A stretch of DNA of 64,000 nucleotides from Styela clava. Lineage: Eukaryota. The notes under the pieces were generated by a model. It was not told where the DNA came from. It saw only the letters and a list, made by a program, of their open reading frames with translations, and did not search any database. The DNA lies in the NCBI RefSeq assembly GCF_964204865.1, contig NC_135263.1, forward strand, positions 13,702,001-13,766,000. Direction: 5' to 3'. The translations under genes were made by a program, and so were the position numbers. Positions 921 through 42,650 of this stretch are shown here, piece after piece (position 1 is the stretch's first letter; each line of letters opens with the position of its first letter).

Positions 921-921
921 T

Positions 922-2310
922 CATTTACTCTAGTACAAATTTCGGAAGAATATTCATTCAGGAAATTTCCGAAAAGAGAGTTTGGAATTCTCTGGAGCTA
1001 TTTTATGAATACTAAACTCTTCATCGAGATCGACATTTTATTGCTTCCAGGTTGAGAGATATCAAAGATTGGACAGTAAACATATTGTAGGTAAACGTAT
1101 GCATCGTTACAACCAATGTGCAAAAAAATATGTTGATGACAACGTAATCACAAAACGTACATCTATTGCAACAGATAAATGTAAAAATTGTGATAACAGT
1201 CTTATTGTTCCACAAGATATGTACAATGAATCACAAAGCGTTATTTCGAAGAAAAATGTTTGCGTCGGGAAACTTGCGCCTTTCTTGCCTACTTCAGATT
1301 TATTTCTCTCTATAGAGCCACCGCAGTCAACTAGAATGGTCGTTAAATATCATCGAGACGTGAAGTTAGCATCAGACTTGCTCGAAGATAATATCGTAGA
1401 TTTCACCTCACCGTTGCGGAAAAGTTTAAGCAAAATCAACCAGCAAATACTAATAGATTCTAATTTTTTGCCGAGATCACCTCCGTACTCACTAAATGAT
1501 TTCCTTGGTCTGATTTGTGATCGTTACAAATCTCCACACTTGGCTGACGATGTGAATGAAAATGGGAAAACCATTGTACTTCTTAATGATGTTAACTGTA
1601 GTCCCGATAGTTACTTCAATCAGAAATACGTGAATTTGAATCGCAACAACATTGACGAAATATTAGAGGATTGGGAAAATGAAAAATTTTCGGAGAAAAT
1701 CAAACAATTTTTTGAAGGTCAAAAGTCTCAACCAGAATCAATCTTATATCCGTATAATAATAACGGAAGTGATACATTGTTCACCGTAGCATCCAATTTC
1801 AGACTGAAACTACAAGTGTCAGAATATGACGTTGGAAAAAACGACGAACTCAGCTTAAGATTGCTCAGCATCGGTACAAATTGTCATTTATGCTTGACTC
1901 ACATAAACGACTTGGCATTCATATCGAATAGAGCAGACATTAATGCACTTGGAATCATGAAAAACATAGAATTCTTGGAAAGAGCACGTACAAACGGACG
2001 AAAACCTTTGATTTTACGTCTTGAAAATACTCAAGTGAAATGACATTTCAAAATTTTATTCTGACGGATCCTTTATATGTTCGAAGCCGGTTGGCGTAGG
2101 CGATTTACTTTGCATTCGACAAGATATTTTAGAGTGTGGTACTATACAGTACGTTTGGGTAGCTTATGCAGTGGTGAAAGATATCGCTAGTGACAAAGTT
2201 TTGTTCTCGGTTTGCACGTTATCACAGGATGTTGAGTCTAGCAAAAGCCCTATTTTTTCTGTGGAAGTTATACACATTCCACAGTGCCATCAGACAAAAA
2301 TTGGAAATGA
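922..2310 (+). pseudogene. CCCH-RNB (HELZ2-like) family copy A, pseudogene; 5' part cut off by the LINE
   Basis: Homology to the family starts FTLVQISEEYSF at ~923. Frameshifts near 1020 and 1080, an in-frame deletion (LADDVNENGK lacks ~40 aa present in paralogs) and a TGA at 2041. The 3' remnant DLLCIRQD...VWVA...FSVEVIHIPQCH continues to ~2310. FTSPLRK retained. Confidence 0.85.
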
Positions 2311-3430
2311 ACGGTCATAGGCATTTGTATTGTATATCCGTTTTAAGCGTAGTTGGATACCAACATACATGCATTAGTTTAGCGCTTCTATAAACGTAAA
2401 CAACCTGTATTTCATATAAATAGGGCTTTTCATGTACATATATAAGGATTTCATTACGTTAATTTTCTATAGATTTTTGCATTTCTAACTGCATATGTTA
2501 GCTTCAGCAAATATATTCAAAAGTTCAATCAAATAAATACCTTTTTTATGTGATTGATGATGTTTATTTTCAGAAGATACGTTCCTATTTTTATTATGCA
2601 TGTGAAAGTTGTTAAAATATACATATTGCAATGCATATCATTCACTTAATATATCAAGCAGAAAATCAAGAATTAATGGAAATTCCAAAGATATGCATGT
2701 CTCTGAAACGAGCATACAAGAATTCATTTGAAAACAAATAAAATTAACAATGAAGTTAAAAGAGTCCCGGTATACAACAATATCATTTTGTGTTCAAACT
2801 AATTAAAGTAGTGTAATATTTTTGTTGTTTTTGTGGCCTACCTATGTGACGTAATCGTTGACGTATTTGTGAATAATCGTTTACGTAATTGTGACGTAAT
2901 CATTGAATCTTGCTTATTAGCCACGGTAATAAAGAAGGGATTCGAAGCTCGTAAAAACATCCATACTATCCTTTTTCATTATTTGTTATCAACCATAAAT
3001 GTACCATCTAATAAAAATGAGACGTTCGGAGTCATCGAGAATGTTTAAGGTTGCTCGTTTTTGATTAGTCCATAGTGACATCATAAACCAGAATCCAAAA
3101 TTAACTCCAACTCTGATTAAAACCGTTGAAACCAAAATCAATTATTCATAGGTTACAAATAATAATTTTGTAAAATAATAATTTCACAAGTTTTCAGAAA
3201 TATGTTTTATACCGGTCCATATCAAATCAAAATTTCATTCTCCGAATATCATCAACATAGAAACAAATTTAATTCTAACGATTTCAAAATAAATATAAGT
3301 GGATGTACGTACGTTTCAATCGGTACGACGTACATTATTACCTGAATTATTAATAAGAGTTCAGACTTATGACATGTAACGATATTATGTTTATTTTGAA
3401 TATGTATTTGCTGTTAGATTAAGGTATATA

Positions 3431-3492
3431 CAGGTTGGGCCAAAAAATGTTGTTCAGAATGTAAAAACGGTAATATTTTTTGGCCCATCCTG
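3431..3492. mobile_element. 62-bp Tc1/mariner-like MITE (second copy 38648-38709)
   Basis: TIR CAGG(T/A)TGGGCCAAAAAAT, flanked by TA on both sides. Confidence 0.6.
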
Positions 3493-5396: not shown

Positions 5397-5427
<31 letters not shown>

Positions 5428-5442
5428 TACGACTCCAAATAT

Positions 5443-5704: not shown

Positions 5705-5717
5705 AAATAACCTTTGG

Positions 5718-6108
5718 TTAAAGCAATCTTTAAAATCTATAAATGAAAAAATCGACGCAAAAAGCTAAAATAATAAAGCAAAAACATATGATTAAAGTAG
5801 GCATAGAAAAAATGTTGTTGACTGTTTTTGCAATTTCGCAGTTACAATTAGGAATCTGTATAATTTCAATCGAAAAATCTCCACTGTCACAAGGGTTGTC
5901 ATTTCGCGATAATGTGCAAACTCAAAACAGAACATTGACATTAGTAATTTCTCTGACAACTCCATAGGCTACCCAAACATAAAAATCAGCATCGCATTTA
6001 GAGACATCTCGGCGAATGCAAAGGAAATACCGGTTTTGTACATTTGAACGAGCCTCCCGAACAGAATATTGAATCCCAGTGGATTCGAACACTTTCTAGT
6101 CGTAGAAT
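5718..6108 (-). pseudogene. CCCH-RNB family copy B: 3' remnant of the TM-tailed gene
   Basis: Matches 40395-40796 (ILRLESVRIHWDS...FSMPTLIICFCFIILAFC) with an 11-bp deletion near 6028 and a premature TAA at 5730-5732; joined to unrelated DNA above 6108. Confidence 0.85.
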
Positions 6109-7638: not shown

Positions 7639-9306
7639 TTAGAGCTGTTCATTTTCGTTTTCAGGTTGATGGCACTGTGGAATCTGTATAACTTCCACAG
7701 AAAAAGTTTGGCTCTGGCAAGACTTATCATCCTGTGATAACGTGCAAACAGAGAACAAAACTTTGTCATCTGCGAACTCTTTCACCACTGCATGAGCTAC
7801 CCAAACGTATTGTATAGTACCACACTCTGAAATATCTTGACGAATGCAAAGTAAATCGCCTACGTCGACCGGCTTCGAACATATGAAGGATCCTCCCGAA
7901 TAAAATTTTGAATCCCAGTTCACTTGAACATTTTCAAGACGTAAAATCAAAGGTTTTTGTTCGTTTGTGAGTGCTCTCTCCAAGAATTCGATGTTTTCCA
8001 TGATTCCAAGAGCATTAATGTCTGTTCTATTCGACATGAATGCCAAGTCGGGATTTTTAATGTGGGTCAAGCACAAATGACAATTTTCCCCGATGCTGAG
8101 TAATCTTAAGCTGAGCTCGTCGTTCCTTCCAACGTCATATTGTGACACTTGTAGTTTCAGTCTGAAGTTAGTTGCTACAGTAAACAATGTATCGAAACCA
8201 ACCATCTTGTATGGATATAAAATTGATTCTGGTTGAGATCTCTGACGTCCGAAAAATAGTTTGATTTTCTCTGGAAAATTTTCATCCCCCCAATCCTCTA
8301 ATATTTCGTCAATGTTGTCACGATTCAAATTTACGTATTTCTGATTGAAGTAATTATCAGGATCGCAGTAAACATTCTTGAAAAGTACAATGGTCTTTCC
8401 ATTTTCATTGTTCACTTCCACGTTGTAGTGAAGTTCACCGTAACGCATTTTTCTTGTTGGTATCGACTTTCTCATATTATGTTTCACGTTATTAAACATA
8501 TATGACACTGAAAATTTAATTTCACTTACATTCGATATCATCGCCTCAGCCAAGTGTGGAGTTTTGTAACGAATACAAAGTAGACCACACAAATCATCTC
8601 GTGAGTACAGTGTTGAGCTTGGCGAGAGAATAGAATTAATTAATATTTGTTGGTTGAATTTGCTTTCATATTTACTCAGAGGTGAGGTGAAATGTACAAT
8701 ATCATCATCGCACAAGTTTGATGCTAATTTTACATCTCGGTGATATTTAACGATCATTCTTGTTGACTGTGATGGTCCTTTAGAAAGAAAGAAATCTGAA
8801 GTAGCCAAGAAAGGCGCAAGTTCCTCTACGCAAATTTTTTTCTTTAAAATAACGCTTTGTGATTCCTTGTATATATCTTGTGGAACAATAAGACTGTTAT
8901 CATAATTTTTCAATTTTTCTTTTGTAATAGATGTACGTTTTGTGATTACGTTGCCAACAACATATTCTTTTGCACATTGGTTGTAGCGATGCATAACTCC
9001 ACCAACAAGTATATTTGCCTTCCAATCTTCAACATTTCCCAATATAGCGGGGATATAATCACTGTTTCTCCGAAGAGATTTAGTGTCCATGAAATATCTC
9101 CAAAGAAATTCATGCTCTCTCGGGGGTTCTATTAATGAATATTCCTCCAAAATATGTACTAGAGTAAATGTTGGTGCGCTTGCATTAAGAGAACAATTGG
9201 TATGAAAATAAATTGACAGAGCCAATGAAATATTTCTTCTTGAAAAACCGTTTGAAGATCCAACTGTATGTAAATGATTTGAGATTCCATTTTGGCTAAA
9301 TTCCAT
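7639..9306 (-). CDS. CCCH-RNB family copy C: 555-aa N-terminally truncated ORF lacking zinc finger, OB fold and catalytic D-x7-DD motif
   Basis: Uninterrupted ORF homologous to the C-terminal ~3/4 of the paralogs (LALSIYFH, HFTSPLSKY, LCLTHIKNP, LCIRQD, WVAH). The ATG lies at a rearrangement junction. May be a pseudogene. Confidence 0.6.
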   Translation of the reverse strand: MEFSQNGISNHLHTVGSSNGFSRRNISLALSIYFHTNCSLNASAPTFTLVHILEEYSLIEPPREHEFLWRYFMDTKSLRRNSDYIPAILGNVEDWKANILVGGVMHRYNQCAKEYVVGNVITKRTSITKEKLKNYDNSLIVPQDIYKESQSVILKKKICVEELAPFLATSDFFLSKGPSQSTRMIVKYHRDVKLASNLCDDDIVHFTSPLSKYESKFNQQILINSILSPSSTLYSRDDLCGLLCIRYKTPHLAEAMISNVSEIKFSVSYMFNNVKHNMRKSIPTRKMRYGELHYNVEVNNENGKTIVLFKNVYCDPDNYFNQKYVNLNRDNIDEILEDWGDENFPEKIKLFFGRQRSQPESILYPYKMVGFDTLFTVATNFRLKLQVSQYDVGRNDELSLRLLSIGENCHLCLTHIKNPDLAFMSNRTDINALGIMENIEFLERALTNEQKPLILRLENVQVNWDSKFYSGGSFICSKPVDVGDLLCIRQDISECGTIQYVWVAHAVVKEFADDKVLFSVCTLSQDDKSCQSQTFSVEVIQIPQCHQPENENEQL

Positions 9307-17445: not shown

Positions 17446-17914
17446 TATAACGGCTCAACGCCATACGATGGCGATGTGCTCGTTAGGGTGATTGGAATAA
17501 ATAGATCGTACAGGCACTTTATTTTTGATGACGCGGTTCTGTCTGAGTTCCTTTCAAAGTTCGAAACGATTGTCCAAAGATGTTTATTGTTGAGTCAAAA
17601 TAGTAGTCAAATAATGATGAAATAGTTGTCAAACAGTAATCCGGTAAAATACAGTGCTATTACACAGGAGGGACCAATAATAACTATACGAAACAGGAAA
17701 TAGAATTATATGATGTAAATTTAAACTACGCCTAACTAATAATACTAAAACCCCCCGATTGATTAAGATACAAATTTATACGTCCTACCTCCAAGCGGCT
17801 CACGCCGAAAGAGATCCCGCCAACACCAAAATGGTCAGGGTTCAATGCCCTAAGTTACCGTTGCCAGTTTAGTTACAATAAGAGCGGTCACTGTTTAGAA
17901 TCATGGCCGCTACA
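17446..17914 (-). repeat. 3' LTR (469 bp)
   Basis: Direct repeat of 24860-25442 apart from the insertion in the latter. Confidence 0.95.
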
Positions 17915-18364
17915 TGGCTCCCCAAATCAGTTCCTCTCGTATGGAAGTACTTGATAAAAACAAGAACCAACAAAGTGAAGCTTCGATGCCGGTGCACCAT
18001 TGAGCATTTCAAATTGAATAATGTCAAAACATAACGATTGGCTCCACCGTCGGGGAAACCCCACAAACAAGTAATAACAAGCGAAAATGAAAAACACTTT
18101 GCAGTTATGAAGGTTAAACAACGATTGGCTCTGCCGTCGGGAAAACCCCACATACAAGAAAAACAGAAAGCACTTTATAAAATTACAAAGGTATCAAATT
18201 GTGAGAAAAGTTGTAAACTCGTCAATTACGTTCAATAGAAACACACAAAGCATATGCAAATAGCAAAACACTAACACAATAAGAACGTAGTGATAAAATT
18301 AATCAACTACTAACACAGTAAATAAGTAAAATCAAATTACTAACAAAATAAAGGTGTAATGCAA

Positions 18365-24705: not shown

Positions 24706-24859
24706 GATTAGATGGTGGTAATCTAATTGCAGCTGATTACAGGATTAGGATAGGCCTACGCGGCCTTCTCAGCAGCACAACTTACTGATTATATGACGTT
24801 TTGCTGCAACAGTTGCAGATTTTGACAATGTCCTCCCGCGGTTTGATGGTGTATTTTAC

Positions 24860-28699: not shown

Positions 28700-30040
28700 T
28701 AAATTTGTATTTTGCAATAACTGAAATTGTCAATATTTAATATTTCAAAATGTTATAATTAAATATAATTGAATATGTAATTAATAAAGTTTAGAATGCC
28801 AGCCACCTGTTGTTGTCGCAATAGTCAAATAAATACATATTTACTGTGCCTTCCAAACATTCTTACATATTTACCTTCAAAAACAGTATGAGACCATTAA
28901 ATATTTAGTTTATGTACAATTTCTTTGTTTTAAGTTATCGACTTTATTAAATCTCGACCACACGGGGCTCATCATTAGTTCATGATTTAATTAACTGTAT
29001 TTCGACATATCATGATAAATAATTAGCAAGATGGAATTTGATTTTCGTCAGAACTATCCCTTTATTAAACGCAACACATCGACTATAAATTTAGATACTT
29101 ATTGAGACAAAGAAGGACAGATGTATAATGGGTTTAAGAATTACGAAAAGGATAGAATTGTGATGTATAGTGTTCGGTATACGTAAATTTTATCCCAATA
29201 AAATAGGGTCAGTGAAAACCAATATCCATAAAGTTTTCTGTGAATAGTGTTTAAACCCATTTGCATTCTAATCGAAGCTTTAGTTAGCCAGGTAGTCATA
29301 GGCGCATGGGTATAAGTATCCTCGGCTGGATGTGGCAAATGTTCGAATATAAAACCGCAAACCCGGGAAACTAACCTTATCTTCAGATAGTAATGAAGTT
29401 GATTAATAGTATATACCAAGTTCCAAATTTGAGATATATATCAGATTTGCCTTATTTTATAATTGTATTGACGTTATAAATCAGTTATAATTTACTACAA
29501 ACAACCGAAAGCTGATCCCTTTGTTTGCCAATGAAGCTGGCCAATAGCCTACTGTTAGTTTATACTCATAACTCATATTTTTAGAAGAAATGCTACAAAT
29601 CGTGATGTTCGCGCTCAAGCATATACCGAGTACCAAAGCAAACTTTGGTTTGCGTGTGGATACTAACTCTGTCAAATGAGCGAGTCAGTTTGTTTGGTAT
29701 TCATTAGATCATTTTATGTTTTTTGTAAAATAAAAACAAAAACTAGTAAAGGTATAATAATCGTCTGTGATTTCTACACACCAAGTGTTTTTAGCTTCTG
29801 TGATTGATTCTAATGATGCGAAGATGGAAACATGTCAAAATTATATGACTTTCGGATCATGCAAATTCGGGTATAGGTGTACAGTCATCCACCAGAAGAA
29901 CATTCCGATTCAGAATTATTTATTGCTACTGTAGCGGAACTTTCAAAGGGTAATAACTTAACAGTTGGAATCAAAAGAATTGATGCTGAAATTCCCGAAA
30001 CCTATTTTTTTCCGAATAATCCCTGGTGTCGAGCAAATGC
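28700..30040 (+). repeat. Upstream region plus 5' end of copy D, duplicated at ~33000-34552
   Basis: Colinear similarity from tgtcaatatttaatatttcaaaatgtta through the zinc-finger codons. Confidence 0.8.
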
Positions 30041-31991
30041 TGAAGTTGGTGATCTTGTGTTATTTCAAAAATCAAAAAAAGTGAAGAAGATACGAAAAAT
30101 GTCAGGAAGTTGGAGACAACCACTTGATTATAACTGCGGTAGAATAGTTAAAATATTGTTGAAGGCGATCCAACATAAAGTCAACCGGATGAAAATTAAT
30201 GTGATATCAAATCTGGTTAAAGCTTTTACAATAGACACTGAAGGAACCGTACGTTATGATGACGCTTTCAGCATTGAAAAGTGTAAGAAATGCAGAAAAC
30301 CCGAATGTAGTAAAATAGGAATACACATCTCTGCCCAGTCGACAGATACAAACCCCCTATATACAGATAAAAATGGGTTTTTGGAAGGTCGTGTTACATT
30401 GGGGCTGTCATTTTATTTCCATACCTCCTGTTCTCCGAATGCAAGCGTTCCAACATTTACTCTAGTAAACATCTTCAAAACGTATCCCTTTCTGAAATTT
30501 GAAAAGAAAGAAGAGTTTAAAATTCTCTGGAACCATTTCATGAATGCCAAATATCTTCAAAGGTGTAGTTATAGTATTGTAGCTCGGTCACGAGAAATTG
30601 AAGATTGGAAAGTAAATTTACTTGTCGGTAAAATGATGCATAGCTACAACGACAGCGCAAAGAAGTATATTTCGGGTCATGTAATCACTAGACATACATC
30701 AATTCAAATAATGAAAAGAGAAAGCAAAATTCTCCTGGTACCACGTGATTTTTACGATGGCGTAAAAAGTATTATATCAAAAACATGTTTTGGTGTTGAA
30801 GAACTCGCGCTTTTTCTAGCATCTTCCGATTTGTTTCTTTCTGTGGAACCAACGGACTCGACTAAAAGAGGCATTAAATACAATCTAGGAGTTAAGTTAG
30901 CATCAGACTTAATTCAGGAAGATATACCGCAATTTACTTCGCCGCTGCGAAAACTTCCGAGCAAGATCAATCAGCAAATATTAATGAATTCGTGTGTGTC
31001 ACCGAGCTCGACCTTGTTTTCGCGAGATGATTTGCTTGGTCTGCTTTGTATTCGTTACACAGATCCATACTTGGCTGACGCTTTGATAACCAACGTTGGC
31101 ACGAATACCTTTTCAGTCGCATATCTTTTCAACAATATAAGACGTCGTATACGCCATTTTCAACCAACAAAAACAATACGTTATGATCAACTTCACTATA
31201 ACGTGGAAAAGACAGTTGAAGACGAGAAGACTATTGTGCTTCTTAGAAATGTTCATTGTGAACCTGGTACTTATTTCAATCAAGAATACGTTACTTTGAT
31301 TCGCGGGAACATTGATGAAATTTTGGAGGATTGGGGAAATGAAAATGTTCCGGAGAAAATTAAACAATATTTCGAAGGATCTCAACCGGAATCAATTCGA
31401 TATCCCTATAAGAAGAGAGGTTGTGATACATTGTTCATCGTGGAATCCAATTTTCTTGTTAAGCTCCAAGTTTCAGAACATGACGTTAAAAGAAACAAAG
31501 AACTCAGCTTAAGATTACTCATTATCGGGCCAAATTGTCATTTGTGTTTGACCCATATCAAAAATCCTGAATTAGCATTCACATCAGATAGAACAGACAT
31601 AAATGCTCTGGGTATCATGGAAAACATTGAATTTTTGAAAAGTTCATCCACAAGCGAACACAAACCTGTGATTGTACGACTGGAAAATGTTCAAGTTCAG
31701 TGGGATTCAACGTTCTATTCGGGGGGCTCGTTCATAAGTTTGAAACCGGTTAACGTAGGCGATTTTCTTTGTATTCGCCAAGATATTTCTGAATGCAAAA
31801 GTAGACCACCGTATGTTTGGGTAGCCCATGCAATAGTCAGGGAAGTTGCAAATGAAAAAGTTTTGTTCTCGGTGTGCACTTTATCACAAAATGACAGATC
31901 TTGTGGAACAGGGCGTTTTTCAGTGGAAATTATACAAATTCCAAAGTGTCTTCAATCTGACGACGGAATCGAAAAGTCCAAAAGCACTTGA
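29824..31991 (+). pseudogene. CCCH-RNB family copy D: full length but frameshifted in the zinc finger (36-aa ORF 29824-29934; main frame open 29877-31991, first ATG 30099)
   Basis: tgtacagtcatcc versus tgtacacacagtcatcc in copy E = 4-bp deletion. Main frame has AFTIDTEGTVRYDDAFSIE, IGIHI, FTSPLRK and FLCIRQD...WVAH...FSVEII. Could still encode a 630-aa protein from 30099. Confidence 0.7.
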
Positions 31992-34326: not shown

Positions 34327-34552
34327 ATGGGGAAATGTCAAAATTATATGACTTTCGAATCATGCAAATTTGGGTATGGGTGTACACACAGTCATCCAGC
34401 AAAAAAAAAACATTCCGATTCAGAATTATTTGTTGCTACTGTAGTCGAACTTTTAAAGGATAATAACTTAACAGTTGTAATTAAAAGAATTGATGCAAAA
34501 ATTCCCGAAACTTATTCTGTTCTAAATAATACTTGGTGTCTAGCCATTGGTG
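34327..34552 (+). pseudogene. CCCH-RNB family copy E: 5' fragment (intact CCCH finger plus start of OB fold); ORF reads on to 34584
   Basis: MGKCQNYMTFESCKFGYGCTHSHP...IKRIDAKIPETY...W is homologous to the N-terminus of D; homology stops at ~34552. Confidence 0.8.
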
Positions 34553-35337
34553 CAAACTGTGGAAGTGGTCGTACATGCAAATAGTTAGCTTAGTCGTATA
34601 GGATGTCACCACCGACGTTCAAGCGATTAACGCGTTCGGAAGTGAAATATGTACCAAATATACACCCAAATACCATCTCTGTGGTGTAATACATTGTGTA
34701 TAGGCAGTCAAATGATTTATCCTCGCACATCTATCACTTTATCCGTTTTTATTTATTATCTCAAAAATCCCTGACAATATGTTTATATTTTCAACATTTA
34801 CATATTTCCTGTTCACAGTGAATCATTCTATTAATTAAGCATAGTTTCTAGTTAGTATTGGGTATTATTGTTTCCTAATATAAATTGGAATCTGTCGTAA
34901 TTTTGCATGCAACATATATGCAACATTGTTTGTAGCAACATTTACTCTTTTGTGTAGATTTATGAATAAAGCTTGTTTCCGAAGAATCTTATCGCAACGG
35001 CAAATAGAACTCCACTACAACATTATTGAGAGAATTTCATATTCCAACTATAATAAATAGGCCATTAATCGTCGGAATAATTTTGTTGTTTTTAAAATGG
35101 AGCAATAATAAGTAATATTTATTTGTAAAAAAATTTCCATTTCGAGCAAAACCTATTTATTCTGCCAATTATACTTGTAACAGTGTATATGCTTTATATT
35201 AATATATTGAGAATCAAAGTAGGTTGAAAATTGATAATTCAATTTTTACTAATACATATTACAGATATTTGAGATAAGACATTTGCTGGCTAGGCTAGGT
35301 CCTGTTTTCTTCAAGATTACTGATAAACAATGTGAAG

Positions 35338-37537
35338 ATGAGTAAGATATGCAGAGTGTACGACAATTTTGGAACGTGCCAATTTGGATATAAATGTAAA
35401 TATGATCATCCAACAAAACACTTCAACTCGGAAATTTTTACTGCAAAGGTAGAAAAAATTAGTAAAACTAATAGGATTATAATTCACAGAATTGACGATG
35501 ACAGATCAGAAACTTATTTCTTTCCAACTTCTCCCTGGCATCGACTGGATGCTAAAGATGGAGATCTTGTGATATTTCAAAAATCAGAGAAAGTAATAAA
35601 AATTTACAATGAAAAGAATCAAAAATATAATATTGGCAGGATAGTTATAGTAATGCCAACATCTATCGGTGATCAAACCGGCGTAATACAAATCAATAGA
35701 GTTCCAAATCAAATCCAACATTTCAAATATAAGTTCCAAGACAAAGCTTTTACGTGGGACACTGAAGGAACCAAACGTCGCGATGACGCTCTCAGTATTG
35801 AACTATGTCAGAACAAAGAAAACTGTAAAAAAATAGGAATACATATCATTGCTGATTCTATATGCTCAAATCCTTTACATATAGATGAATATTCAATTGG
35901 TTTTTCGAAGAAAAATACTAATCTGGCTCTTTCATTCTATTTTCATACTATCTGCTCTGAAAATATAATCGCACCGACATTCAATTTAGTACGAATCTCG
36001 AAAGAATATTCATTCAGGGAATATCTGAAAGATCCAGAGAAGAAGAAAGAGTTTAATGATATTCTTTAGCCATTTTTCATGGATACTAACTACATTCAAC
36101 GGGGACGACATGTTATCGCGTCTACCTTGGGAAGTAAGTATTGAAGACTGGAAAGTAAGTTTACTTGTTGCTAAACTTATGCACCGCTACAACCAATGTG
36201 CAAAAAAATATGTTGTTAGCAACTACAAACTGTTGGTAATTACAAAATGTACATCTATTGCAACAGAAAAATGGGAAAATTGTGATAACAGTCTTATTGT
36301 CCCACAAGATATATACAATGAATCACGAAGCGTTATTTCAAAGAAAAAAACTTGCGTCGAGGAACTTGCGCCTTTCTTGGCTACTTCAGATTTATTTCTC
36401 TCTGTAGAGCCACCGCAGTCAACTAGAATGGCCGTGAAATGTCATCGGGACGTGAAGTTTGACTCAGATTTGCTTGAAGATGATATCGTAGATTTCACCT
36501 CACCGTTGCGGAAAAGTTTTAGCAAAATCAACCAGCAAATACTATTAAATTATATTCTTTCGCCGAGATCACTTCTGTATTCACGAAATGACTTGCTTGG
36601 TCTGATTTGTGATCGTTACAAAACTCCACACTTGGCTGACGCTGTGATACCAAATGTTGGTGCAATTAATTTTTCAGTCTCATATATTTACAATAACGTA
36701 AAACACAATTTGATTAACCTGAGACCAACTAGAAAAATTTGTTATGGCGAACTTCACTACAACATGGAGGTCGAAACTGAAAATGGGAAGACCATTGTAC
36801 TCCTTAAGAATGTTAACTGTGATCCTGATAATTACTTCAATCAGAAATACGTGAATTTGAATCGTGACAACATTGACGAAATATTAGTGGATTGGGGAAA
36901 TGAAAATTTTCCGGAGAAAATCGAACAATTTTTTGAAGGTCAAAATTCTCAACCAGAATCAATCTTATATCCTTACAATAATATCGGTTCTGATACATTG
37001 TTTACTGTGGCATCCAACCTCAGACTGAAACTTCAAGTGTCAGAAAAGGACGTTGGAAAAAACGACAAACTCAGCTTAAGATTGATCAGTATCGGGTCAA
37101 ATTGTCATTTGTGCTTGACTCACATAAAAAATCCCGACTTGGCATTCATATCGAATAGAGCAGACATTAATGCTCTTGGAATCATGAAAAACATAGAATT
37201 CTTGGAAAGAGCACGTACAAACGGACGAAAACCTTTGATTTTACGTCTTGAAAATACTCAAGTAAAATGTAATTCAAAATTTTATTCTGGAGGATCCTTT
37301 ATATGTTCGAAGCCGGTTGGCGTGGGCGATTTACTTTGCATTCGACAAGATATTTTAGAGTGTGGTACTTTACACTACGTTTGGGTAGCTCATGCAGTGG
37401 TGAAAGAAATCGCGAGTGACAAAGTTTTGTTTTCGGTTTGCACGTTATCACAGGATGTTGAGTCTAGCGAAAGCCCTATTTTTTCTGTGGAAGTTATACA
37501 CATTCCACAGTGCCATCAGCCTAAAATTGGAAATTAA
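35338..37537 (+). pseudogene. CCCH-RNB family copy F: full length, nonsense codon plus frameshift
   Basis: MSKICRVYDNFGTCQFGYKCKYDH (CCCH) and TWDTEGTKRRDDALSIE. TAG at 36067-36069 where paralogs have TGG (ILW). A 4-bp AAGT duplication at ~36132-36139 shifts the frame; the remainder is open to 37537. Confidence 0.85.
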
Positions 37538-40500
37538 CGGTCATAGGCTTTTGTATTGTATATCAGTTTTAAGCGTTGATGGATACCAACATACATGCAT
37601 TAGTTTAGCGCTTCTAAAAACGTAAACAACATGTATTTCATATAAATAGGGCTTTTCATGTACATATATATGGATTTCATCACGATAATTTTCTATAGAT
37701 TTTTGCATTTCTAACTGCATATTTCAGCTTTAGCAAATATATTCAAATGTTCATTCAAATAAATAAATACCCTCTTTTATGTGATTGATAATGTTTATTT
37801 TCAGAAGATACGTTCCCATTTTTAATATACATGTGAAAGTTGTCAGAATGTACAATTTGCAATGCATATCATTCACTTAATATATCAAACAGCAAATCAA
37901 GAACTAATGAAAGTTCCAAAGATATGCATGTCTCTGAAACGAGCATACAAGCATTCATTTGAAAACAAATAAATTAACAATGAAGTTAAGGAGTCCCGGT
38001 ATACAACAATATCATTTTGTGTTCAAACTAATTAAAATAGTGTAATATTTTTGTTGTTTTTGTGGCCTACCTATGTGACGTAATCGTTGAGGTATTTGTA
38101 AATAATCGTTTACGTAATTGTGACGTAATCATTGAATCTTGCTTATTAGACACGGAAATAAAGAAGGGATTCGAAGCTCGTAGAAACATCCATACTATCC
38201 TTTTCCACTATTTAGTATCAACCATAAATGTACCATCTAATAAAAATGAGAAGTTCGGAGTCATCAAGAATGTTAAAAGTTGCTTGTTTTTGATTAGTCC
38301 ATGGTGACATCATAGACCAGAATCCAAATTAACTCCAACTCTGATTAGAACCGTTGAAACCAAAATCGATTATTCATAATAACTTCGTTAAAAAATAATT
38401 TTACAAGTTTTTTGAAATATGTTTTATACCAGTCCATATCAAATCAAAATTTCATTCTCCGAATATCATCAACATAGAAACAAATTTAATTCTAACGATT
38501 TCAAAATAAATATAAGTAGATGTACGTACGTTTCAATCGGTACGACGTACATTATTACCTGAATTATTAATTGGAGTTTAGACTTATGACATGTAACGAT
38601 ATTATGTTTATTTTGAATATGTATTTGCTGTTAGATTAGGGTATATACAGGTTGGGCCAAAAAATGTTGTTCAGAATGTAAAAACGGTAATATTTTTTGG
38701 CCCATCCTGTATATATATGTATATACTGCTCTATATCTTTTTAATAACAGTTTTTCGAATTGAGAATTTGATTATATGTTTTGTATATCGTTCAAATACT
38801 AAAATGAAACCAATGAAGCTATGATTATTCATCACTGTAGGGGGCGATCTTCGTACAGAGAATTTTGGGTTCAGAAACAGTTCTATCAGGTAATCCTGGG
38901 TTATCTTGTACAAATCAGAGCAAGAAAATTAACAAATAATATTGTAGACTCAGACTATTTCTATAACATAAGGCTGAGGTTCGAATCAAAGATTATGTAC
39001 ATAAAATGAGATGCTGATCTTGTAAAGCTCGATTAGGTGTCAAAATTTTGCAATGATCAGGCTTAAACACAAGTACGATGAAGCAGTATCTGGACCCAGG
39101 AATCGATTCATCGATGCAAAATTGATGCACTCATGCGCCTCATAGCCAAGTACTGCGTGTTTTTTTGTTTTTATTTGTTTTTTTTTAGAGAACGTAAAAT
39201 CAATCAGGACGATTTTTGAAAATAATGAATAGTGAAAGTATGACATGTCATTTTAATGTTAAATAAACTCACTGAAACACAATATACAGGCAACTCCAAT
39301 TAATTACAATACAATATAATGACAATAGAGAACTAATCGAGACTTTTCATACGCTTTTTATATGACATTGGCTTGAATAAACATTATAAAATTGCCTCAT
39401 CATAAGAAATTAATCCGCTCCTGTCAATTTCGCCCGTTCATCCGAATAAGGAATTTATGATTTAGTTAATTTATTGTATTTATGTCGAGATTATTTTTGA
39501 AACCTTATATATTGTTTTATACGATATAAATAATCATTCATAATCTTTCTTACAACATTTTTTGAATTCGATCTTGATTTTTTTGAAATAGTCTTTTATA
39601 TTTTCGTCAACCAAGTATTTGTGAATTTTTGAAAACAGTAGAAAGAGGAAAATTTTGATTTTATTAATACCAAAGTGTAGTCATTACCCGAATTATTGTG
39701 AAATATACTCTTTGTTTAGCAGGCTATATAGCAAATTTTAAGATTTAAGAATTGACGAAATTAGGTGTATGCCCAAGGATTGGGCTGGTTTCAGTGAATG
39801 AAAAATCTCAGTCCGTTTGATATTTTAAAAACATTTCCTTCATGGACTAGTTAAAGCTCATCAATGTTATTTAAATGAAAAACATATATATCTTTTAGGT
39901 TTCATTAGCAAAAATTAATTAGAATTTTGAAACTTTCATACTCTGGAACTTCATTAAAAGAGTCATTGCATTACAGAAAATTTACTTTGTGTCTATGGAA
40001 AGATTTGATGCATTAATTAAGCCATATTCTTAATAGTTTTTATTAGTTTTGACAAACGAACTATCATATTACAAGATATCACTATATATATATATATATA
40101 TATTACGACTCCAAATATCAGGGGTGCCAAACCTGCTTTCGACCGCGATCGACTAAAATCTTCAAAATAGCTCGCGATTGACTGATCGGCCCAGTCTCAA
40201 ATACTGTATGTGTGTATTGTATTTTGCGCATTTATTAGTACTTTATTTTTGCTTCTTTAAAATACTGGTTAGGGGCAATTTTTGGGATATTTTATTAAAT
40301 TCACTCAACTTTAGACGCGATAGACTGCTCGAGACATGGCGATTGACCGTCGATCGCGATTGACGTGTTGGCGACCCCTGGAATAGACGTTTGGTTAAAG
40401 CAATCTTAAAAATCTATAAATGAAAAAATCAATACAAAAAGCTAAAATAATGAAGCAAAAACATATAATTAAAGTAGGCATAGAAAAAATGTTGGTGACT

Positions 40501-40796
40501 GTTTTTGCAATTTCGCAGTTACAATTAGGAATCTGTATAACTTCAATCGAAAAATATCCACTGTCATGATGGTTGTCATTTTGCGATAAAGTGCAAACTG
40601 AAAACAGAACATTGGCATTAGTAATTTCTCTGACAACTCCATGGGCTACCCAAACATAACAATCAGCATCGCCTTTAGAGATATCTTGGCGAATGCAAAG
40701 GAAATCTCCTACATGGACCGGTTTTGTACATTTGAACGAGCCTCCCGAACAGAACATTGAATCCCAGTGGACTCGAACACTTTCTAGTCGTAGAAT
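36180..40796. repeat. Segmental duplication block 1, copy b
   Basis: Colinear with 1100-6108. Confidence 0.9.
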
Positions 40797-42650
40797 CAAA
40801 GGTTTTCGTCCCTCTGTAATGGCTCTCTGCAAGAATTCAATGTTTTCCATGATACCCAGAGTATTTATGTCTGTTCTATCTGACATGAATGCCAATTCGG
40901 GATTTTTTACGTGGGTCAAACACAAATGACAATTTGTTCCGATACTGAGTAATCTTAAGCTGAGGTCGTCGTTCTTTCCAACGTCCTTTTCTGACACTTG
41001 AAGTTTCAGTCTGAAATTAGATGCTACGGTAAACAATGTATCAGAACCGTTATTATTGTAAGGATATAGAATTGATTCTGGTTGAAAATTTTGACCTTTA
41101 AAAAATTGTTTTATTATCTCCGAAAAATTCTCATTTTCCCAATCCTCTAATATTTCGTCAATGTTGTCACGATTCAAATTCACGTATTTCTGATTGAAGT
41201 AATTATCAGGATCACAGTTAACATTCTTAAGAAGTACAATGGTCTTTCCATTTTCATTTTCGACCTCCATGTTGTAGTGGAGTTCGCCATAACAAATTTT
41301 TTTAGTTGGTCTCCAGTTCATCAAATTATGTTTTATCTTATTGTAAATATATGAGACTGAAAAATTAGTTGCACCAACATTTGTTATCACAGCGTCAGCC
41401 AAGTGTGGAGTTTTGTAACGATCACAAATCAGACCAAGCAAATCATTTCGTGAGTACAGAAGTGATCTCTGCGAAAGAAATGAATTTATTAGTATTTTCT
41501 GGTTGATTTTGCTTGAAATTTTCCTCAAAGGTGAGGTGAAATCCACGATATCATCTTCGAGCAAGACCGATGCCAACTTCACGTCCCGATGATATTTAAC
41601 GGCCATTCTAGTTGACTGCGGTGGCTCTACTGAGAGAAATAAATCTGAAGTAGCCAAGAAAGGCGCAAGTTCTTCAATGCAAATTTTTTTCTCCAAAATA
41701 ACGCTTTGTGTGTCATTGTATATATCTTGTGGAACAATAAGACTGTTATCACAATTTTCCCATTTTTCTGTTGCAATAGATGTACGTTTTGTGATTACGT
41801 TGCCACCAACATATTGTTTTGCGCATTGGTTGTAACGATGCATGAGTTTACCTACAAGTATGTTTACTTTCCAATCTTCAATATCTCTCAACCTAGAAGC
41901 AATAAAATGCCGATCTTGATAAAGAGATTTAGTATCTATGAAATATCTCCACAGAATTTGAAACTTCTTTCTTGGACATTCCATGAATGAATATTCTTCC
42001 GAAATTCGTACTAAGGTGAAGGTTGGTGCGCTTGCATTCACAGTACAATTGGTATGAAAATAAATAGACAGAGCCAACGAGTTATTTTTCTTTGAAAAAC
42101 CATTTGAGTATTCATTTATATGCAGAGGATTTAAGTTTGTGGATTCAGCAATGATATGTATTCCTATTTTATTACAATCAGATTTTCTGCATTTTTGACA
42201 TTGTTCAATACTGAAAGCGTCATCGTGACGTTTGCATCCTTCAGTATCTAACGTAAACGCCTGCACCTTCATTTTTCCTCCGATAATTTTATCACCGATA
42301 GCTTTTAACAATATTGAAACTATTCGACCAATATTAAGTTGACTTCCTTGTTGTGGTTTCCTCCAATTGTCTTCTTCGTCGTGAATTTTTATAACTTCAT
42401 CTGATTTTTGAAATATCACAAGATCCCCGTTTTCAGCATTTTTTCGATGCCAGTAATTTTTAGGCAGGAAATAAGTGTCTGACTTTTCATCTTCAACTCT
42501 TTTAATATAAATTCGGGGTTTTGCATCACTAACTTGCTCTACGACCGCGGCAAAATATTCTGTGTTTATATTTTCTGATAAATGAACTTTTCTACATTCA
42601 GATCCATACATGCATGCTCTAAAAGTGATATAATCTCGGCATGTATTCAT
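40395..42650 (-). CDS. CCCH zinc finger - OB - RNB (RNase II family, HELZ2-related, helicase-less) protein with C-terminal transmembrane tail, 751 aa; copy G, the only intact family member
   Basis: ATG at 42650; C-x8-C-x5-C-x3-H (CRDYITFRACMYGSECRKVH); RKNAENGDLVIFQ...IGRIVSILLK (CSD/OB-like); AFTLDTEGCKRHDDAFSIE...IGIHIIAE; FTSPLRK..SKINQKIL; DFLCIRQD...YVWVAHG...FSIEVI; hydrophobic tail IFSMPTLIICFCFIILAFCIDFFIY-RFLRLL. Confidence 0.85.
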   Translation of the reverse strand: MNTCRDYITFRACMYGSECRKVHLSENINTEYFAAVVEQVSDAKPRIYIKRVEDEKSDTYFLPKNYWHRKNAENGDLVIFQKSDEVIKIHDEEDNWRKPQQGSQLNIGRIVSILLKAIGDKIIGGKMKVQAFTLDTEGCKRHDDAFSIEQCQKCRKSDCNKIGIHIIAESTNLNPLHINEYSNGFSKKNNSLALSIYFHTNCTVNASAPTFTLVRISEEYSFMECPRKKFQILWRYFIDTKSLYQDRHFIASRLRDIEDWKVNILVGKLMHRYNQCAKQYVGGNVITKRTSIATEKWENCDNSLIVPQDIYNDTQSVILEKKICIEELAPFLATSDLFLSVEPPQSTRMAVKYHRDVKLASVLLEDDIVDFTSPLRKISSKINQKILINSFLSQRSLLYSRNDLLGLICDRYKTPHLADAVITNVGATNFSVSYIYNKIKHNLMNWRPTKKICYGELHYNMEVENENGKTIVLLKNVNCDPDNYFNQKYVNLNRDNIDEILEDWENENFSEIIKQFFKGQNFQPESILYPYNNNGSDTLFTVASNFRLKLQVSEKDVGKNDDLSLRLLSIGTNCHLCLTHVKNPELAFMSDRTDINTLGIMENIEFLQRAITEGRKPLILRLESVRVHWDSMFCSGGSFKCTKPVHVGDFLCIRQDISKGDADCYVWVAHGVVREITNANVLFSVCTLSQNDNHHDSGYFSIEVIQIPNCNCEIAKTVTNIFSMPTLIICFCFIILAFCIDFFIYRFLRLL

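What the first reader, a model, noticed from the sequence alone, without database searches (positions are those of the whole stretch)
922..42650. Expanded family of helicase-less HELZ2-like proteins: CCCH finger + OB fold + compact RNase II (RNB) domain
Seen: seven single-coding-exon paralogs or fragments share C-x8-C-x5-C-x3-H, then R.nA..GDLV.FQ...GRIV.IL, AFT.DTEG....DDA(F/L)SIE...IGIHI, LALS.YF, FTSPLRK...INQQIL, LCLTHIKNP..AF, LENVQV.W, LCIRQD...YVWVAH...FSVE.I. Established: TID-x7-DDA.S...GVHIAD and TSPIR(K/R)Y are RNase II/R/Dis3 RNB motifs, preceded by cold-shock OB folds. HELZ2 is an interferon-induced CCCH/helicase/RNB 3'-5' exoribonuclease. From memory, its post-RNB region contains LCLEH..P..CF, YLCIR, YTWVAHG and FTVELL just before helicase 2. 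Inference: these genes keep the finger, OB, RNB and the beta-barrel preceding helicase 2 but have lost both RecA motors. That gives a ~720-750-aa stand-alone RNA-binding or nuclease effector, a domain architecture I do not recognise from any named family. The rapid birth-and-death pattern suggests an antiviral or anti-transposon RNA-surveillance system.
Basis: partly seen in the sequence, partly recalled or inferred. Interest (0 to 1): 0.92.

Follow-up and report, generated by a model that had tools for sequence, protein, structure and literature searches.

The report
Helicase-less HELZ2-derived gene family, sea squirt
A sea-squirt (Styela clava) gene cluster holds many copies of a short, intron-less protein built from the RNA-cutting middle part of the antiviral enzyme HELZ2 but lacking both of its helicase motors; whether it still cuts RNA is untested.

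Summary
The window has seven copies or fragments of one family, and only one is intact (40398-42650, minus strand, 751 aa). The genome is Styela clava, because an NCBI "uncharacterized protein" is identical to a paralog. It holds 63 matching segments in four places and at least 13 intact single-exon ORFs of 687-756 aa.

Pfam and a PDB profile search do not recognise the family. An exhaustive HMMER scan of 1.84 billion proteins found one outsider, an ascidian HELZ2-like protein. Profile-profile comparison with HELZ2-like proteins gives 99.8% probability (E 5e-28). It covers the RNB domain and the post-RNB region and stops just before helicase 2. An AlphaFold model (pLDDT 74) matches RNase II/Dis3L2 (Z about 18). 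Its C-terminal barrel matches UPF1 domain 1B (Z 6.9).

No helicase sequence lies in the window or in either cluster. Two canonical multi-exon HELZ2-like genes sit elsewhere. Trees nest the family inside tunicate HELZ2. Median dN/dS is 0.34.

The active site is rewired. Asp 1, 3 and 4 and the motif IV Arg are kept, Asp 2 is Arg, motif II is deleted, and only 16 of 39 HELZ2-invariant RNB positions remain. Distant members lost all catalytic residues. Nuclease activity and an immune role remain untested. Another first-stage note flags a copy of this family on another piece of the genome.

The parts
40395..42650 (-). Copy G: the only intact family gene in the window (751 aa plus stop)
   Evidence: Uninterrupted ORF. 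100% self-match. Contigs of runs guessed to be RNA tile 40209-42503 with no splice joints.
42582..42641 (-). G: CCCH zinc finger (C4-x8-C13-x5-C19-x3-H23)
   Evidence: All four ligands are invariant in 10 paralogs. Pfam zf-CCCH and zf-CCCH_DUS3L hit copy F at E 7.9e-4 and 6e-6.
42306..42563 (-). G: single OB/cold-shock-like domain (residues 30-115)
   Evidence: Model residues 24-115 match OB folds at Z 7.5. hhalign to the OB_HELZ2 region of a HELZ2-like profile gives E 2.3e-4, probability 44%. GD.V...G.VV.IL aligns with columns conserved in at least 90% of HELZ2-like rows.
41421..42275 (-). G: compact, diverged RNB domain (residues 126-410)
   Evidence: hhalign 99.8% to the HELZ2-like RNB. VIA-align to RNase II 2ix0: Z 17.8, rmsd 3.8 over 232 residues, model 113-420.
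42219..42248 (-). G: RNB motif I (D135-x5-R141-x-D143-D144). Asp 1, 3 and 4 are kept; Asp 2 is Arg.
   Evidence: Site table over 50 aligned sequences. The spacing equals RNase II D201/D207/D209/D210 (my knowledge of RNase II numbering).
41520..41537 (-). G: RNB motif IV, T-S-P-L-R-K (the Arg is equivalent to RNase II R500)
   Evidence: S373 and P374 are invariant. R376 is present in 9 of 10 Styela paralogs and 34 of 34 HELZ2-like rows. The following R-Y became K-[I/N].
40926..41420 (-). G: S1-like region after the RNB (residues 411-575)
   Evidence: Aligns to HELZ2-like residues after the RNB. Structural alignments to Rrp44 and Dis3L2 run on to model residue about 570, at the end of their S1 domain.
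40521..40925 (-). G: Cys/His-bearing linker plus six-stranded beta-barrel (residues 576-710), the equivalent of the stalk and 1B domain of helicase 2
   Evidence: Model 618-705 matches UPF1 321-414 at Z 6.9, rmsd 2.7, 82 residues. The barrel end lies 78 residues before the Walker A motif in P0013, against 81 in UPF1 (for P0013; UPF1 numbering from my knowledge). C577, H580, C652 and H670 are conserved in at least 90% of 50 sequences.
40398..40520 (-). G: lineage-specific hydrophobic C-terminal tail (residues 711-751)
   Evidence: It lies in T-rich DNA that is not homologous to the 3' ends of paralogs L004 and L006. It is shared only with recent G-type copies; the tail of B carries a stop. pLDDT is below 50.
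891..2290 (+). Copy A: pseudogene, query residues 195-713 across three frames
5721..6108 (-). Copy B: C-terminal fragment of a G-type copy, with in-frame stops
7639..9306 (-). Copy C: 5'-truncated copy (555-aa ORF). Finger, OB and motif I are missing. Motif IV reads SPLSK.
29877..31991 (+). Copy D: 704-aa ORF whose zinc finger is destroyed by a stop and frame change just upstream
34327..34536 (+). Copy E: short, diverged N-terminal fragment (30% identity)
35332..37537 (+). Copy F: near-full copy split into two overlapping ORFs (245 and 493 aa) by a frame change near 36060

Best explanation
These are genes of a tunicate-specific, tandemly amplified, intron-less family that descends from the nuclease module of HELZ2.

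Each intact protein (687-756 aa) has these parts in order: one CCCH zinc finger; one OB/cold-shock domain (the second CSD of HELZ2 is deleted); an RNB domain about 90 residues shorter than in ascidian HELZ2-like proteins; an S1-like domain; a Cys/His-bearing linker; and the beta-barrel (1B-like) that in HELZ2 opens helicase 2. The protein ends where the RecA domains would begin.

Shown here: the homology, the fold, the absence of helicases, the nesting inside tunicate HELZ2, purifying selection, and birth-and-death turnover.

Inferred: the protein binds single-stranded RNA with finger, OB and S1 and threads a 3' end into the RNB channel. In Styela the residues known to be indispensable in RNase II-type enzymes are invariant (Asp 1, 3 and 4 and the motif IV Arg). 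I therefore take these copies to be still Mg-dependent 3'-5' exoribonucleases with a loosened active site. Without a helicase they would be limited to unstructured or pre-unwound RNA.

I put the odds of retained catalysis at about one in two; the identity and ancestry part alone I hold at about 0.9. The fast-evolving finger and OB region may diversify target choice. A role in RNA surveillance against viruses or retroelements is plausible but untested.
For: Family and copies.

The only outsider in an exhaustive HMMER scan is an ascidian HELZ2-like protein.

hhalign gives 99.2% (E 1e-19) and 99.8% (E 5e-28) over 556-581 columns, family 126-716 against P0013 284-1014. Pfam places the RNB of P0013 at 277-645 and AAA_11 from 1071.

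The family shares the tunicate-specific Cys...Cys insert between DDA.S.E and GIH.

AlphaFold: pLDDT 74.3. In Foldseek the top 43 hits are all RNase II/R, Dis3, Dis3L2 or Ssd1, the best at E 1.3e-13. VIA-align gives Z 17-18 for the RNB and Z 6.9 for the barrel against UPF1 1B. The ESM Atlas nearest clusters are all RNB.

Trees: the family is monophyletic (SH-aLRT 100) inside a tunicate clade (99 and 97) that is sister to vertebrates.

dN/dS: median 0.34 over 115 pairs; RNB 0.23-0.47; finger and OB 0.4 to above 1.

D135, D143 and D144 are present in 10 of 10 and R376 in 9 of 10 Styela paralogs.

Human HELZ2 is active with Asn at Asp 2 and is inactivated by mutating Asp 3 (PMC10516660).

No helicase sequence occurs in the window or clusters. 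NCBI's 710-aa model equals the bare ORF. Contigs of runs guessed to be RNA cover the ORF without joints.
Against: Direct Pfam RNB matches fall below the curated threshold: best E 0.046 within the alignment of window copies plus P0001, and 22.3 bits against a cut-off of 29.3 for P0008.

Only 16 of 39 RNB columns that are at least 90% conserved in HELZ2-like proteins are kept. Specific losses:
- Asp 2 is a positively charged Arg.
- The motif II segment is deleted.
- The EE of the LVEE.M..N motif is GK.
- The Asp of HIAD is Ala.
- RRY.D is RK[IN].S.

Distant family members P0003-P0006 have lost all three Asp and the Arg yet keep the whole architecture. The function shared by the family therefore does not need catalysis.

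The good AlphaFold model depended on an alignment that contained 34 canonical HELZ2-like rows. The paralog-only alignment gave pLDDT 36.

Expression rests on contigs of runs only guessed to be RNA. No activity, binding or induction data exist.
Confidence: 0.5

Rival explanations
1. Pseudonuclease. The Styela proteins, like the distant members, have lost catalysis. They act purely as RNA-binding proteins that clamp or sequester RNA 3' ends or specific transcripts, as yeast Ssd1 does with its dead RNB fold.
For: 23 of 39 HELZ2-invariant RNB positions are lost, motif II is deleted and Asp 2 is Arg. P0003-P0006 lack every catalytic residue but keep the full length and the strongly conserved C-terminal half. 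The Ssd1 pseudonuclease is among the top structural matches at E 1.6e-11 and Z 16.3.
Against: Asp 1, 3 and 4 are invariant across 10 paralogs and the motif IV Arg is kept in 9 of 10, although those paralogs differ by dS up to about 0.9-1.2 and by 20-43% in protein sequence. P0002 and P0008 also keep D-x7-DD. The residues lost are ones whose single mutation RNase II tolerates (my knowledge of the Y253A and E390A studies; not tested here).
Confidence: 0.36
2. The ORFs are exons of larger genes. Transcripts join them to helicase exons elsewhere, so the proteins are not really helicase-less.
For: The two canonical HELZ2-like genes of this genome are multi-exon. Transcript evidence here is fragmentary.
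Against: Every intact copy starts at a Met directly before the finger and ends at a stop. No helicase-like sequence lies in the window at E below 6. The nearest helicase-like hits are about 4.5 Mb and 5.8 Mb from the two clusters. NCBI's model is the bare ORF. No joints were seen in four runs. Homology between paralogs ends 180-250 bp outside the ORF.
Confidence: 0.03
3. The copies are decaying, non-functional duplicates, for example retrocopies of a partial HELZ2 transcript, without a function of their own.
For: Six of seven copies in the window are broken. The genes are intron-less while the parental genes are multi-exon.
Against: At least 13 intact ORFs have dN/dS of 0.25-0.62. Full-length relatives at 24-28% identity exist in other datasets. 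Ligand and motif residues are invariant.
Confidence: 0.03
4. The gene is cargo of a mobile element and owes its copy number to transposition.
For: It is multi-copy and single-exon. Copies sit on four contigs. A young Pao LTR element and a MITE-like repeat lie beside copies.
Against: Copies are organised as a repeated unit of three to four genes with a 28-37 kb period, as tandem segmental duplication produces. Flank homology is short and without terminal repeats. The Pao element has its own LTRs at 17444-17894 and 24858-25422 and contains no family copy.
Confidence: 0.03

Closest known systems
HELZ2 (vertebrate interferon-induced 3'-5' exoribonuclease/helicase; canonical tunicate orthologs such as Ciona P0027, 2584 aa, and Styela P0041, 2760 aa)
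   Same: Homologous OB, RNB, S1-like and pre-helicase-2 barrel regions (hhalign 99.8%). A CCCH finger sits at the N-terminus. The family nests in the tunicate HELZ2 clade. The second catalytic Asp is non-canonical, as in human HELZ2, which has Asn there.
   Different: No helicase 1 and no helicase 2. One zinc finger instead of about six. One CSD instead of two. The RNB is about 90 residues shorter, with motif II deleted. Size is about 720 aa against 2600-2900 aa. The genes are intron-less and tandemly amplified. Pfam RNB and OB_HELZ2 models no longer recognise the proteins.
Clavelina lepadiformis 'HELZ2-like' 1500-1550-aa paralogs (P0013, P0022-P0026, P0040)
   Same: They are the nearest relatives in the trees (SH-aLRT 80-88). 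Like the family they are shortened HELZ2 derivatives, present as several paralogs, with Asp 2 replaced (by Arg, Glu or Lys).
   Different: They keep a full helicase 2 (AAA_11 and AAA_12), both CSD regions and a canonical-length RNB that Pfam recognises at E 1e-40. They have no CCCH finger.
DIS3L2 / RNase II / RNase R (stand-alone RNB exoribonucleases)
   Same: A CSD-RNB-S1 layout without a helicase. These are the best structural matches: Dis3L2 at E 1.3e-13 and RNase II at Z 17.8.
   Different: The family has one CSD, a CCCH finger and an extra 1B-type barrel. About 60% of the conserved RNB positions have changed. By tree and shared inserts it descends from HELZ2, not from DIS3L2. The genome's own DIS3 and DIS3L2-like genes are separate.
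Ssd1 (yeast RNB-fold pseudonuclease)
   Same: An RNB fold with a degraded active site used for RNA binding. The distant family members P0003-P0006 are in that state.
   Different: Independent origin. The Styela copies still carry three of the four Asp and the key Arg.
UPF1-type helicase domain 1B (beta-barrel)
   Same: The C-terminal barrel superposes on UPF1 321-414 (Z 6.9, rmsd 2.7). It also sits at the same distance before Walker A in HELZ2-like proteins (for P0013).
   Different: Here the barrel is orphaned from its RecA domains. This Z range is also reached by unrelated barrels such as the V-ATPase N-terminal domains.

Membership tests
RNB superfamily (RNase II/R/Dis3; Pfam PF00773) | Direct match to the RNB profile above the curated threshold | tested here: not met
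   The best match within alignment A1 (window copies plus P0001) is E 0.046, in 1 of 7 sequences. Relative P0008 scores 22.3 bits against a cut-off of 29.3. The PDB profile search found nothing.
RNB superfamily (RNase II/R/Dis3; Pfam PF00773) | Homology to bona fide RNB domains by profile-profile comparison | tested here: met
   hhalign gives 99.8% (E 5e-28) to HELZ2-like proteins whose RNB Pfam scores at E 1e-40 to 1e-77.
RNB superfamily (RNase II/R/Dis3; Pfam PF00773) | RNB fold | tested here: met
   AlphaFold model at pLDDT 74. RNase II 2ix0 gives Z 17.8, rmsd 3.8 over 232 residues. The Foldseek top 43 hits are all from this family. Caveat: the model's alignment included canonical HELZ2-like rows.
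RNB superfamily (RNase II/R/Dis3; Pfam PF00773) | Four motif I aspartates | tested here: inconclusive
   Asp 1, 3 and 4 are present in 10 of 10 Styela paralogs, and Asp 2 is Arg in 10 of 10. Distant members P0003-P0006 have lost the motif I aspartates, keeping at most a Glu at position 1. Human HELZ2 is active with Asn at Asp 2.
RNB superfamily (RNase II/R/Dis3; Pfam PF00773) | Motif IV TSPIRRY with the catalytic Arg | tested here: inconclusive
   S and P are invariant and the Arg is present in 9 of 10. The following R-Y..D became K-[I/N]..S.
RNB superfamily (RNase II/R/Dis3; Pfam PF00773) | Motif II (D.EA..R...) and the LVEE.M..N acidic pair | tested here: not met
   The motif II segment is deleted and EE is replaced by GK in 10 of 10.
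RNB superfamily (RNase II/R/Dis3; Pfam PF00773) | 3'-5' exoribonuclease activity | not testable with these tools
   Needs a biochemical assay.
HELZ2 | Two UPF1-like SF1 helicase domains flanking the RNB | tested here: not met
   No AAA_11/AAA_12 match in any family ORF. None in the window or clusters.
HELZ2 | HELZ2-type OB, RNB and post-RNB region | tested here: met
   for the RNB and post-RNB region. The OB is supported more weakly, at E 2.3e-4.
HELZ2 | Descent from the HELZ2 lineage (phylogeny) | tested here: met
   The family nests in the tunicate HELZ2 clade with SH-aLRT 99 (LG+G4) and 97 (C20 mixture). These were quick searches and the family stem is long (1.3-1.7).
HELZ2 | N-terminal array of C2H2/CCCH fingers | tested here: inconclusive
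   One CCCH finger in Styela. Two finger-plus-OB modules in P0003-P0005. Human HELZ2 has six.
HELZ2 | Induction by innate immune signalling | not testable with these tools
   No suitable raw RNA data could be laid; only contigs of runs guessed to be RNA were available.

The most novel reading that the evidence does not exclude
A minimal stand-alone RNB nuclease has evolved in tunicates from HELZ2. It works with a rewired active site: Arg in place of the second metal-binding Asp, no motif II, and an orphan helicase 1B barrel reused for RNA handling. It has been amplified into a birth-and-death array whose fast-evolving finger and OB modules aim different paralogs at different viral or retroelement RNAs. 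This would be a germline-encoded, diversified RNA-degrading immune family in animals that lack interferon.
Probability: 0.18. Interest if true: 0.78.

Novelty: new variant of a known kind. Interest (0 to 1): 0.6.

Why it matters
HELZ2 is a recently characterised interferon-induced exoribonuclease whose helicases are thought to feed structured RNA to the RNB domain.

This family is a natural experiment in which the nuclease module was cut loose, compacted and amplified. There are at least 13 intact genes and many wrecks in one genome. The family occurs in the sister group of vertebrates.

It offers four things:
- A small, expressible RNB variant for asking which active-site elements are dispensable.
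- An example of a helicase accessory barrel surviving without its motor.
- A candidate lineage-specific RNA-surveillance family.
- A case where Pfam-based annotation fails ("uncharacterized protein") although the ancestry is recoverable.

The family also shows both states, catalytic residues kept and catalytic residues lost. That is useful for studying how pseudonucleases arise.

Tried and rejected
- **Direct Pfam scan** of all window ORFs: only weak CCCH hits and no RNB.
- **HMMER profile of the window copies plus P0001 against PDB sequences:** chance hits only.
- **hhalign against single DIS3 and DIS3L2-like proteins of the same genome:** motif I aligned correctly, but probability was only 2%.
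- **AlphaFold with 10 paralogs only:** pLDDT 36, unusable. This was replaced by the 50-row alignment.
The organisms behind P0002-P0012 stay unknown.
- **Word-index protein search:** returned only one paralog.
- **Helicase exons near the genes:** none. The many helicase hits elsewhere are MOV10-like and IGHMBP2-like genes, not partners.
- **Apparently helicase-less HELZ2-like database entries of 1430-1566 aa:** two of the four scanned begin with the tail of helicase 1, so they are fragments. The other two show no helicase domain and look like partial or chimeric models. None is a counterpart of this architecture.
- **Membrane-anchor reading of G's tail:** not rejected but weakened. The tail lies in T-rich, non-homologous 3' sequence shared only by very recent copies.
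- **Mobile-element cargo:** rejected on flank analysis.
- **Literature search for HELZ2 in tunicates:** nothing found.

Full report
**What is in the window**

The window is G000:C18:13702001-13766000 of a 377-Mb assembly. GC content is about 33% and there are no N stretches.

A tblastn search with the longest family ORF finds seven loci:
- A: 891-2290 (+), three frames.
- B: 5721-6108 (-), C-terminal fragment.
- C: 7669-9279 (-), 5'-truncated.
- D: 29898-31949 (+).
- E: 34327-34536 (+), short and diverged.
- F: 35350-37516 (+), split near 36060.
- G: 40398-42650 (-), intact, 751 aa.

D looks long, but its zinc finger is destroyed by a stop just upstream of the ORF. G is therefore the only intact copy.

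The 2019-aa ORF at 18365-24424 is unrelated. It is a Pao/BEL retrotransposon polyprotein flanked by 99%-identical LTRs at about 17444-17894 and 24858-25422. I only describe it.

**Organism and family size**

NCBI's "uncharacterized protein LOC144422904 [Styela clava]" (P0001, 710 aa) is residue-for-residue identical to the ORF in locus L010. The genome is therefore Styela clava.

A six-frame search of the whole genome gives 63 matching segments in four places:
- C18:13.65-13.86 Mb, which includes this window.
- C5:12.88-13.27 Mb.
- One copy on C2.
- One truncated copy at the end of contig C247.

Thirteen loci carry uninterrupted ORFs of 687-756 aa that start at a Met directly before the finger.

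On C18 the D-type (+), F-type (+) and G-type (-) copies recur in the same order with a 28-37 kb period. D-type copies sit at 13731898, 13769027, 13797445 and 13830217. The array therefore grew by tandem duplication of a multi-gene unit. Copies A, B and C of the window are the decayed tail of the preceding unit.

Between paralogs, DNA homology stops 180-250 bp outside the ORF and shows no terminal repeats.

**Are the genes alive?**

Pairwise dN/dS (NG86) over 115 pairs has a median of 0.34 and a range of 0.25-0.62.

By domain:

| Domain | dN/dS |
|---|---|
| RNB-like part | 0.23-0.47 |
| Terminal barrel | 0.24-0.43 |
| OB | 0.4-0.8 |
| Finger | 0.2 to above 1 (short, noisy) |

dS differs several-fold between domains of the same pair, for example 0.16 against 0.73 in G versus L004. 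This points to gene conversion or recombination among paralogs.

Contigs from four runs (three studies) that the index guesses to be RNA tile the G ORF from 40209 to 42503. In run X1 the flanks are not covered. No joints were reported. This is consistent with an unspliced transcript but is weak evidence. The runs are not on record as RNA, the pieces are short, and some come from paralogs. One contig carries a 15-nt insertion that matches the 5-codon indel seen among paralogs.

**What the protein is**

Pfam sees only a weak CCCH finger. A profile of the window copies plus P0001 finds nothing in PDB sequences.

An exhaustive HMMER scan of 1.84 billion representatives with a 10-paralog profile returned 15 hits. 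Fourteen are family members. These include full-length relatives at 24-28% identity from unnamed assemblies (P0002-P0006). P0003-P0005 carry two finger-plus-OB modules.

The single outsider is P0013, a Clavelina lepadiformis "3'-5' exoribonuclease HELZ2-like" protein of 1540 aa. Its Pfam domains are OB_HELZ2 at 42-135, RNB at 277-645, AAA_11 at 1071-1313 and AAA_12 at 1322-1514.

Profile-profile comparison gives:
- Family against P0013: 99.2% probability, E 1e-19, 556 columns, family 126-716 against P0013 284-1014.
- Family against an alignment of eight HELZ2-like proteins: 99.8%, E 5e-28, 581 columns.

The match therefore spans the RNB and everything after it, up to about 57 residues before helicase 2.

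The OB region matches the OB_HELZ2 part of a HELZ2-like profile more weakly (E 2.3e-4, probability 44%). The roughly 147 residues that separate OB_HELZ2 from the RNB in P0013, which hold the second cold-shock domain, have no counterpart. The family has one CSD.

The family also shares a Cys...Cys insert between DDA.S.E and GIH. Ciona and Clavelina HELZ2 have it and a scallop HELZ2 lacks it.

**Structure**

With paralogs alone AlphaFold failed (pLDDT 36). With a 50-row alignment (16 family and 34 HELZ2-like rows, no human sequence) the model reached pLDDT 74.3 and pTM 0.59.

- **Foldseek:** the 43 hits at E 0.001 or better are all RNase II, RNase R, Rrp44/DIS3, DIS3L2, Dss1 or Ssd1. The best is human DIS3L2 at E 1.3e-13. 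UPF1 helicase cores follow at E 0.006-0.02.
- **VIA-align, RNB:** E. coli RNase II gives Z 17.8, rmsd 3.8 over 232 residues (model 113-420 against chain 181-549). T. brucei RRP44 gives Z 18.1.
- **VIA-align, OB:** residues 24-115 match OB folds at Z 7.5.
- **VIA-align, barrel:** residues 618-705 match UPF1 321-414, which is domain 1B, at Z 6.9 and rmsd 2.7 over 82 residues.

That Z alone is in the range of generic barrels. However, the barrel end lies 78 residues before Walker A in P0013, against 81 in UPF1. This fits the barrel being the 1B domain of helicase 2. The protein stops where the RecA domains would start.

Caveat: the model leaned on canonical HELZ2 rows, so it illustrates the homology rather than proving it independently. 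The ESM Atlas feature search, which uses no alignment, also lists only RNB clusters, at a score of 0.80 that counts as a lead only.

**Helicase-less?**

- No family ORF has an AAA_11 or AAA_12 match.
- tblastn with P0013 finds nothing helicase-like in the window. The best such hit is E 6, inside the Pao element.
- A genome-wide search puts helicase-like sequence no nearer than about 4.5 Mb (C18) and 5.8 Mb (C5) from the clusters.
- The same search shows two canonical multi-exon HELZ2-like genes, with RNB followed by helicase exons, at C17:11.70-11.72 Mb and C1:14.74-14.76 Mb.
- NCBI's 2760-aa Styela HELZ2-like protein P0041 has the full architecture.
- DIS3 and a DIS3L2-like gene are also separate.

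**Origin**

Trees were built on the 573-576 family-anchored columns. In both, the family is monophyletic (SH-aLRT 100) on a very long stem (1.3-1.7 changes per site). It sits inside a tunicate clade with Ciona, Styela and Clavelina HELZ2. Support for that clade is 99 with LG+G4 on 60 rows and 97 with the C20 mixture on 30 rows. The tunicate clade is sister to vertebrate HELZ2.

The nearest branch is the Clavelina group of 1500-aa OB-RNB-helicase-2 paralogs (support 80-88). These were quick searches; the careful search did not finish.

**The active site**

Human HELZ2 has Asn at the second of the four RNB aspartates and is active. Mutating the third abolishes activity (PMC10516660).

In the ten intact Styela paralogs:
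- Asp 1, 3 and 4 (D135, D143, D144) are invariant.
- Asp 2 is always Arg (R141). Clavelina paralogs have Arg, Glu or Lys there.
- The motif IV Arg (R376) is present in 9 of 10.

Against that:
- Only 16 of the 39 RNB columns that are at least 90% conserved in 34 HELZ2-like proteins are retained.
- The motif II segment is deleted.
- EE is GK.
- The HIAD Asp is Ala.
- RRY.D is RK[I/N].S.

The distant members P0003-P0006 have lost the Asp triad and the Arg altogether while keeping the architecture. P0002 and P0008 keep D-x7-DD.

My reading is as follows. The function shared across the family is RNA binding through an RNB-type channel. The Styela branch keeps exactly the residues known from RNase II work to be indispensable (my knowledge of that literature). 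It may therefore still cut RNA, at roughly even odds.

Four residues are conserved in at least 90% of all 50 aligned sequences: C577, H580, C652 and H670. They look like a zinc site tying the linker to the barrel. This is an inference; I could not measure distances in the model.

**The tail of G**

Residues 711-751 are hydrophobic. An earlier first-stage note reads them as a membrane anchor.

The coding DNA there is T-rich and not homologous to the 3' ends of paralogs L004 and L006. It is shared only with very recent G-type copies, and in copy B it contains a stop. It is followed by a MITE-like repeat at about 40004-40305. Model confidence is below 50.

It may be a true tail anchor or an accidental read-through. 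I leave it open.

**Comparison and verdict**

The family works like, and descends from, the nuclease module of HELZ2. It fails the defining helicase features of HELZ2 and falls below Pfam's RNB threshold. It is best filed as a new, tunicate-specific variant within the RNB/HELZ2 kind.

No paper linking HELZ2 to tunicates was found. Database entries that look helicase-less are fragments or partial models.

The antiviral or anti-retroelement role is suggested only by ancestry, array dynamics and the faster-evolving recognition modules.

Another first-stage note (s1-817635) flags a stand-alone copy on another piece of this genome, in agreement.

Noticed in passing
window 17444-25422: A young, apparently full-length Pao/BEL LTR retrotransposon sits between family copies. 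Its LTRs are 99% identical (about 17444-17894 and 24858-25422). It has one uninterrupted 2019-aa ORF (18365-24424, minus) with DUF1759, Peptidase_A17, integrase and DUF5641 domains. Described only.
   Followed up: partly
window 40004-40305: A MITE-like repeat lies directly 3' of gene G, with terminal inverted GGGGT[C/G]GCCAAC-type ends. Contigs of runs guessed to be RNA pile up there at 3-15 times the depth over the gene and run off into many different flanks. It is therefore a dispersed, possibly transcribed repeat.
   Followed up: partly
L030:1-1098 (-), i.e. up to about window 1-680: A 366-aa ORF ending in a ...FDTVDH... motif, typical of non-LTR (LINE) reverse transcriptases, lies at the left edge of the window next to pseudogene A.
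   Followed up: no
G000 C14:7.73 Mb, C13:7.30-7.41, 12.47, 13.57-13.66 and 14.39 Mb, C5:7.10 Mb, C8:24.03 Mb, C1:21.73 Mb (L038-L048): There is a second expanded set of long single-ORF helicase genes, with at least 15 hits. The one scanned (L038) is MOV10-like, with the MOV-10 beta-barrel, helical domain, AAA_11 and AAA_12. MOV10 is another RNA-surveillance/anti-retroelement helicase, so Styela may have amplified several such families.
   Followed up: partly
L037 (G000 C18:9127189-9128700 region): A single-exon 1022-aa IGHMBP2/SMUBP-2-type helicase (1B domain, AAA_11/12, R3H, zf-AN1).
   Followed up: partly
P0013, P0022-P0026, P0040 (Clavelina lepadiformis): Another ascidian has at least seven paralogs of a half-size HELZ2 (OB-RNB-helicase 2, about 1500-1550 aa, no helicase 1, no fingers). 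The second catalytic Asp is replaced in them by Arg, Glu or Lys. HELZ2 has therefore been repeatedly remodelled in tunicates.
   Followed up: partly
P0003, P0004, P0005 (unnamed Logan assemblies): Distant family members of 864-879 aa carry two consecutive CCCH-finger-plus-OB modules. They have lost every RNB catalytic residue while keeping the C-terminal half well conserved.
   Followed up: partly
G000 C18:13.70-13.86 Mb: The array is built from a unit of three to four genes (D-type +, F-type +, G-type -, sometimes C-type -) repeated at least four times with a 28-37 kb period. The G-type copies at 13742398 and 13840775 are nearly identical in protein sequence (dN 0.002, dS 0.007), which indicates a very recent segmental duplication or possibly an assembly duplicate.
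   Followed up: partly
paralog pairs, e.g. G vs L004: Synonymous divergence differs several-fold between domains of the same gene pair (RNB 0.16 against barrel 0.73). This suggests gene conversion or recombination among paralogs and would confound simple dating of duplications.
   Followed up: no
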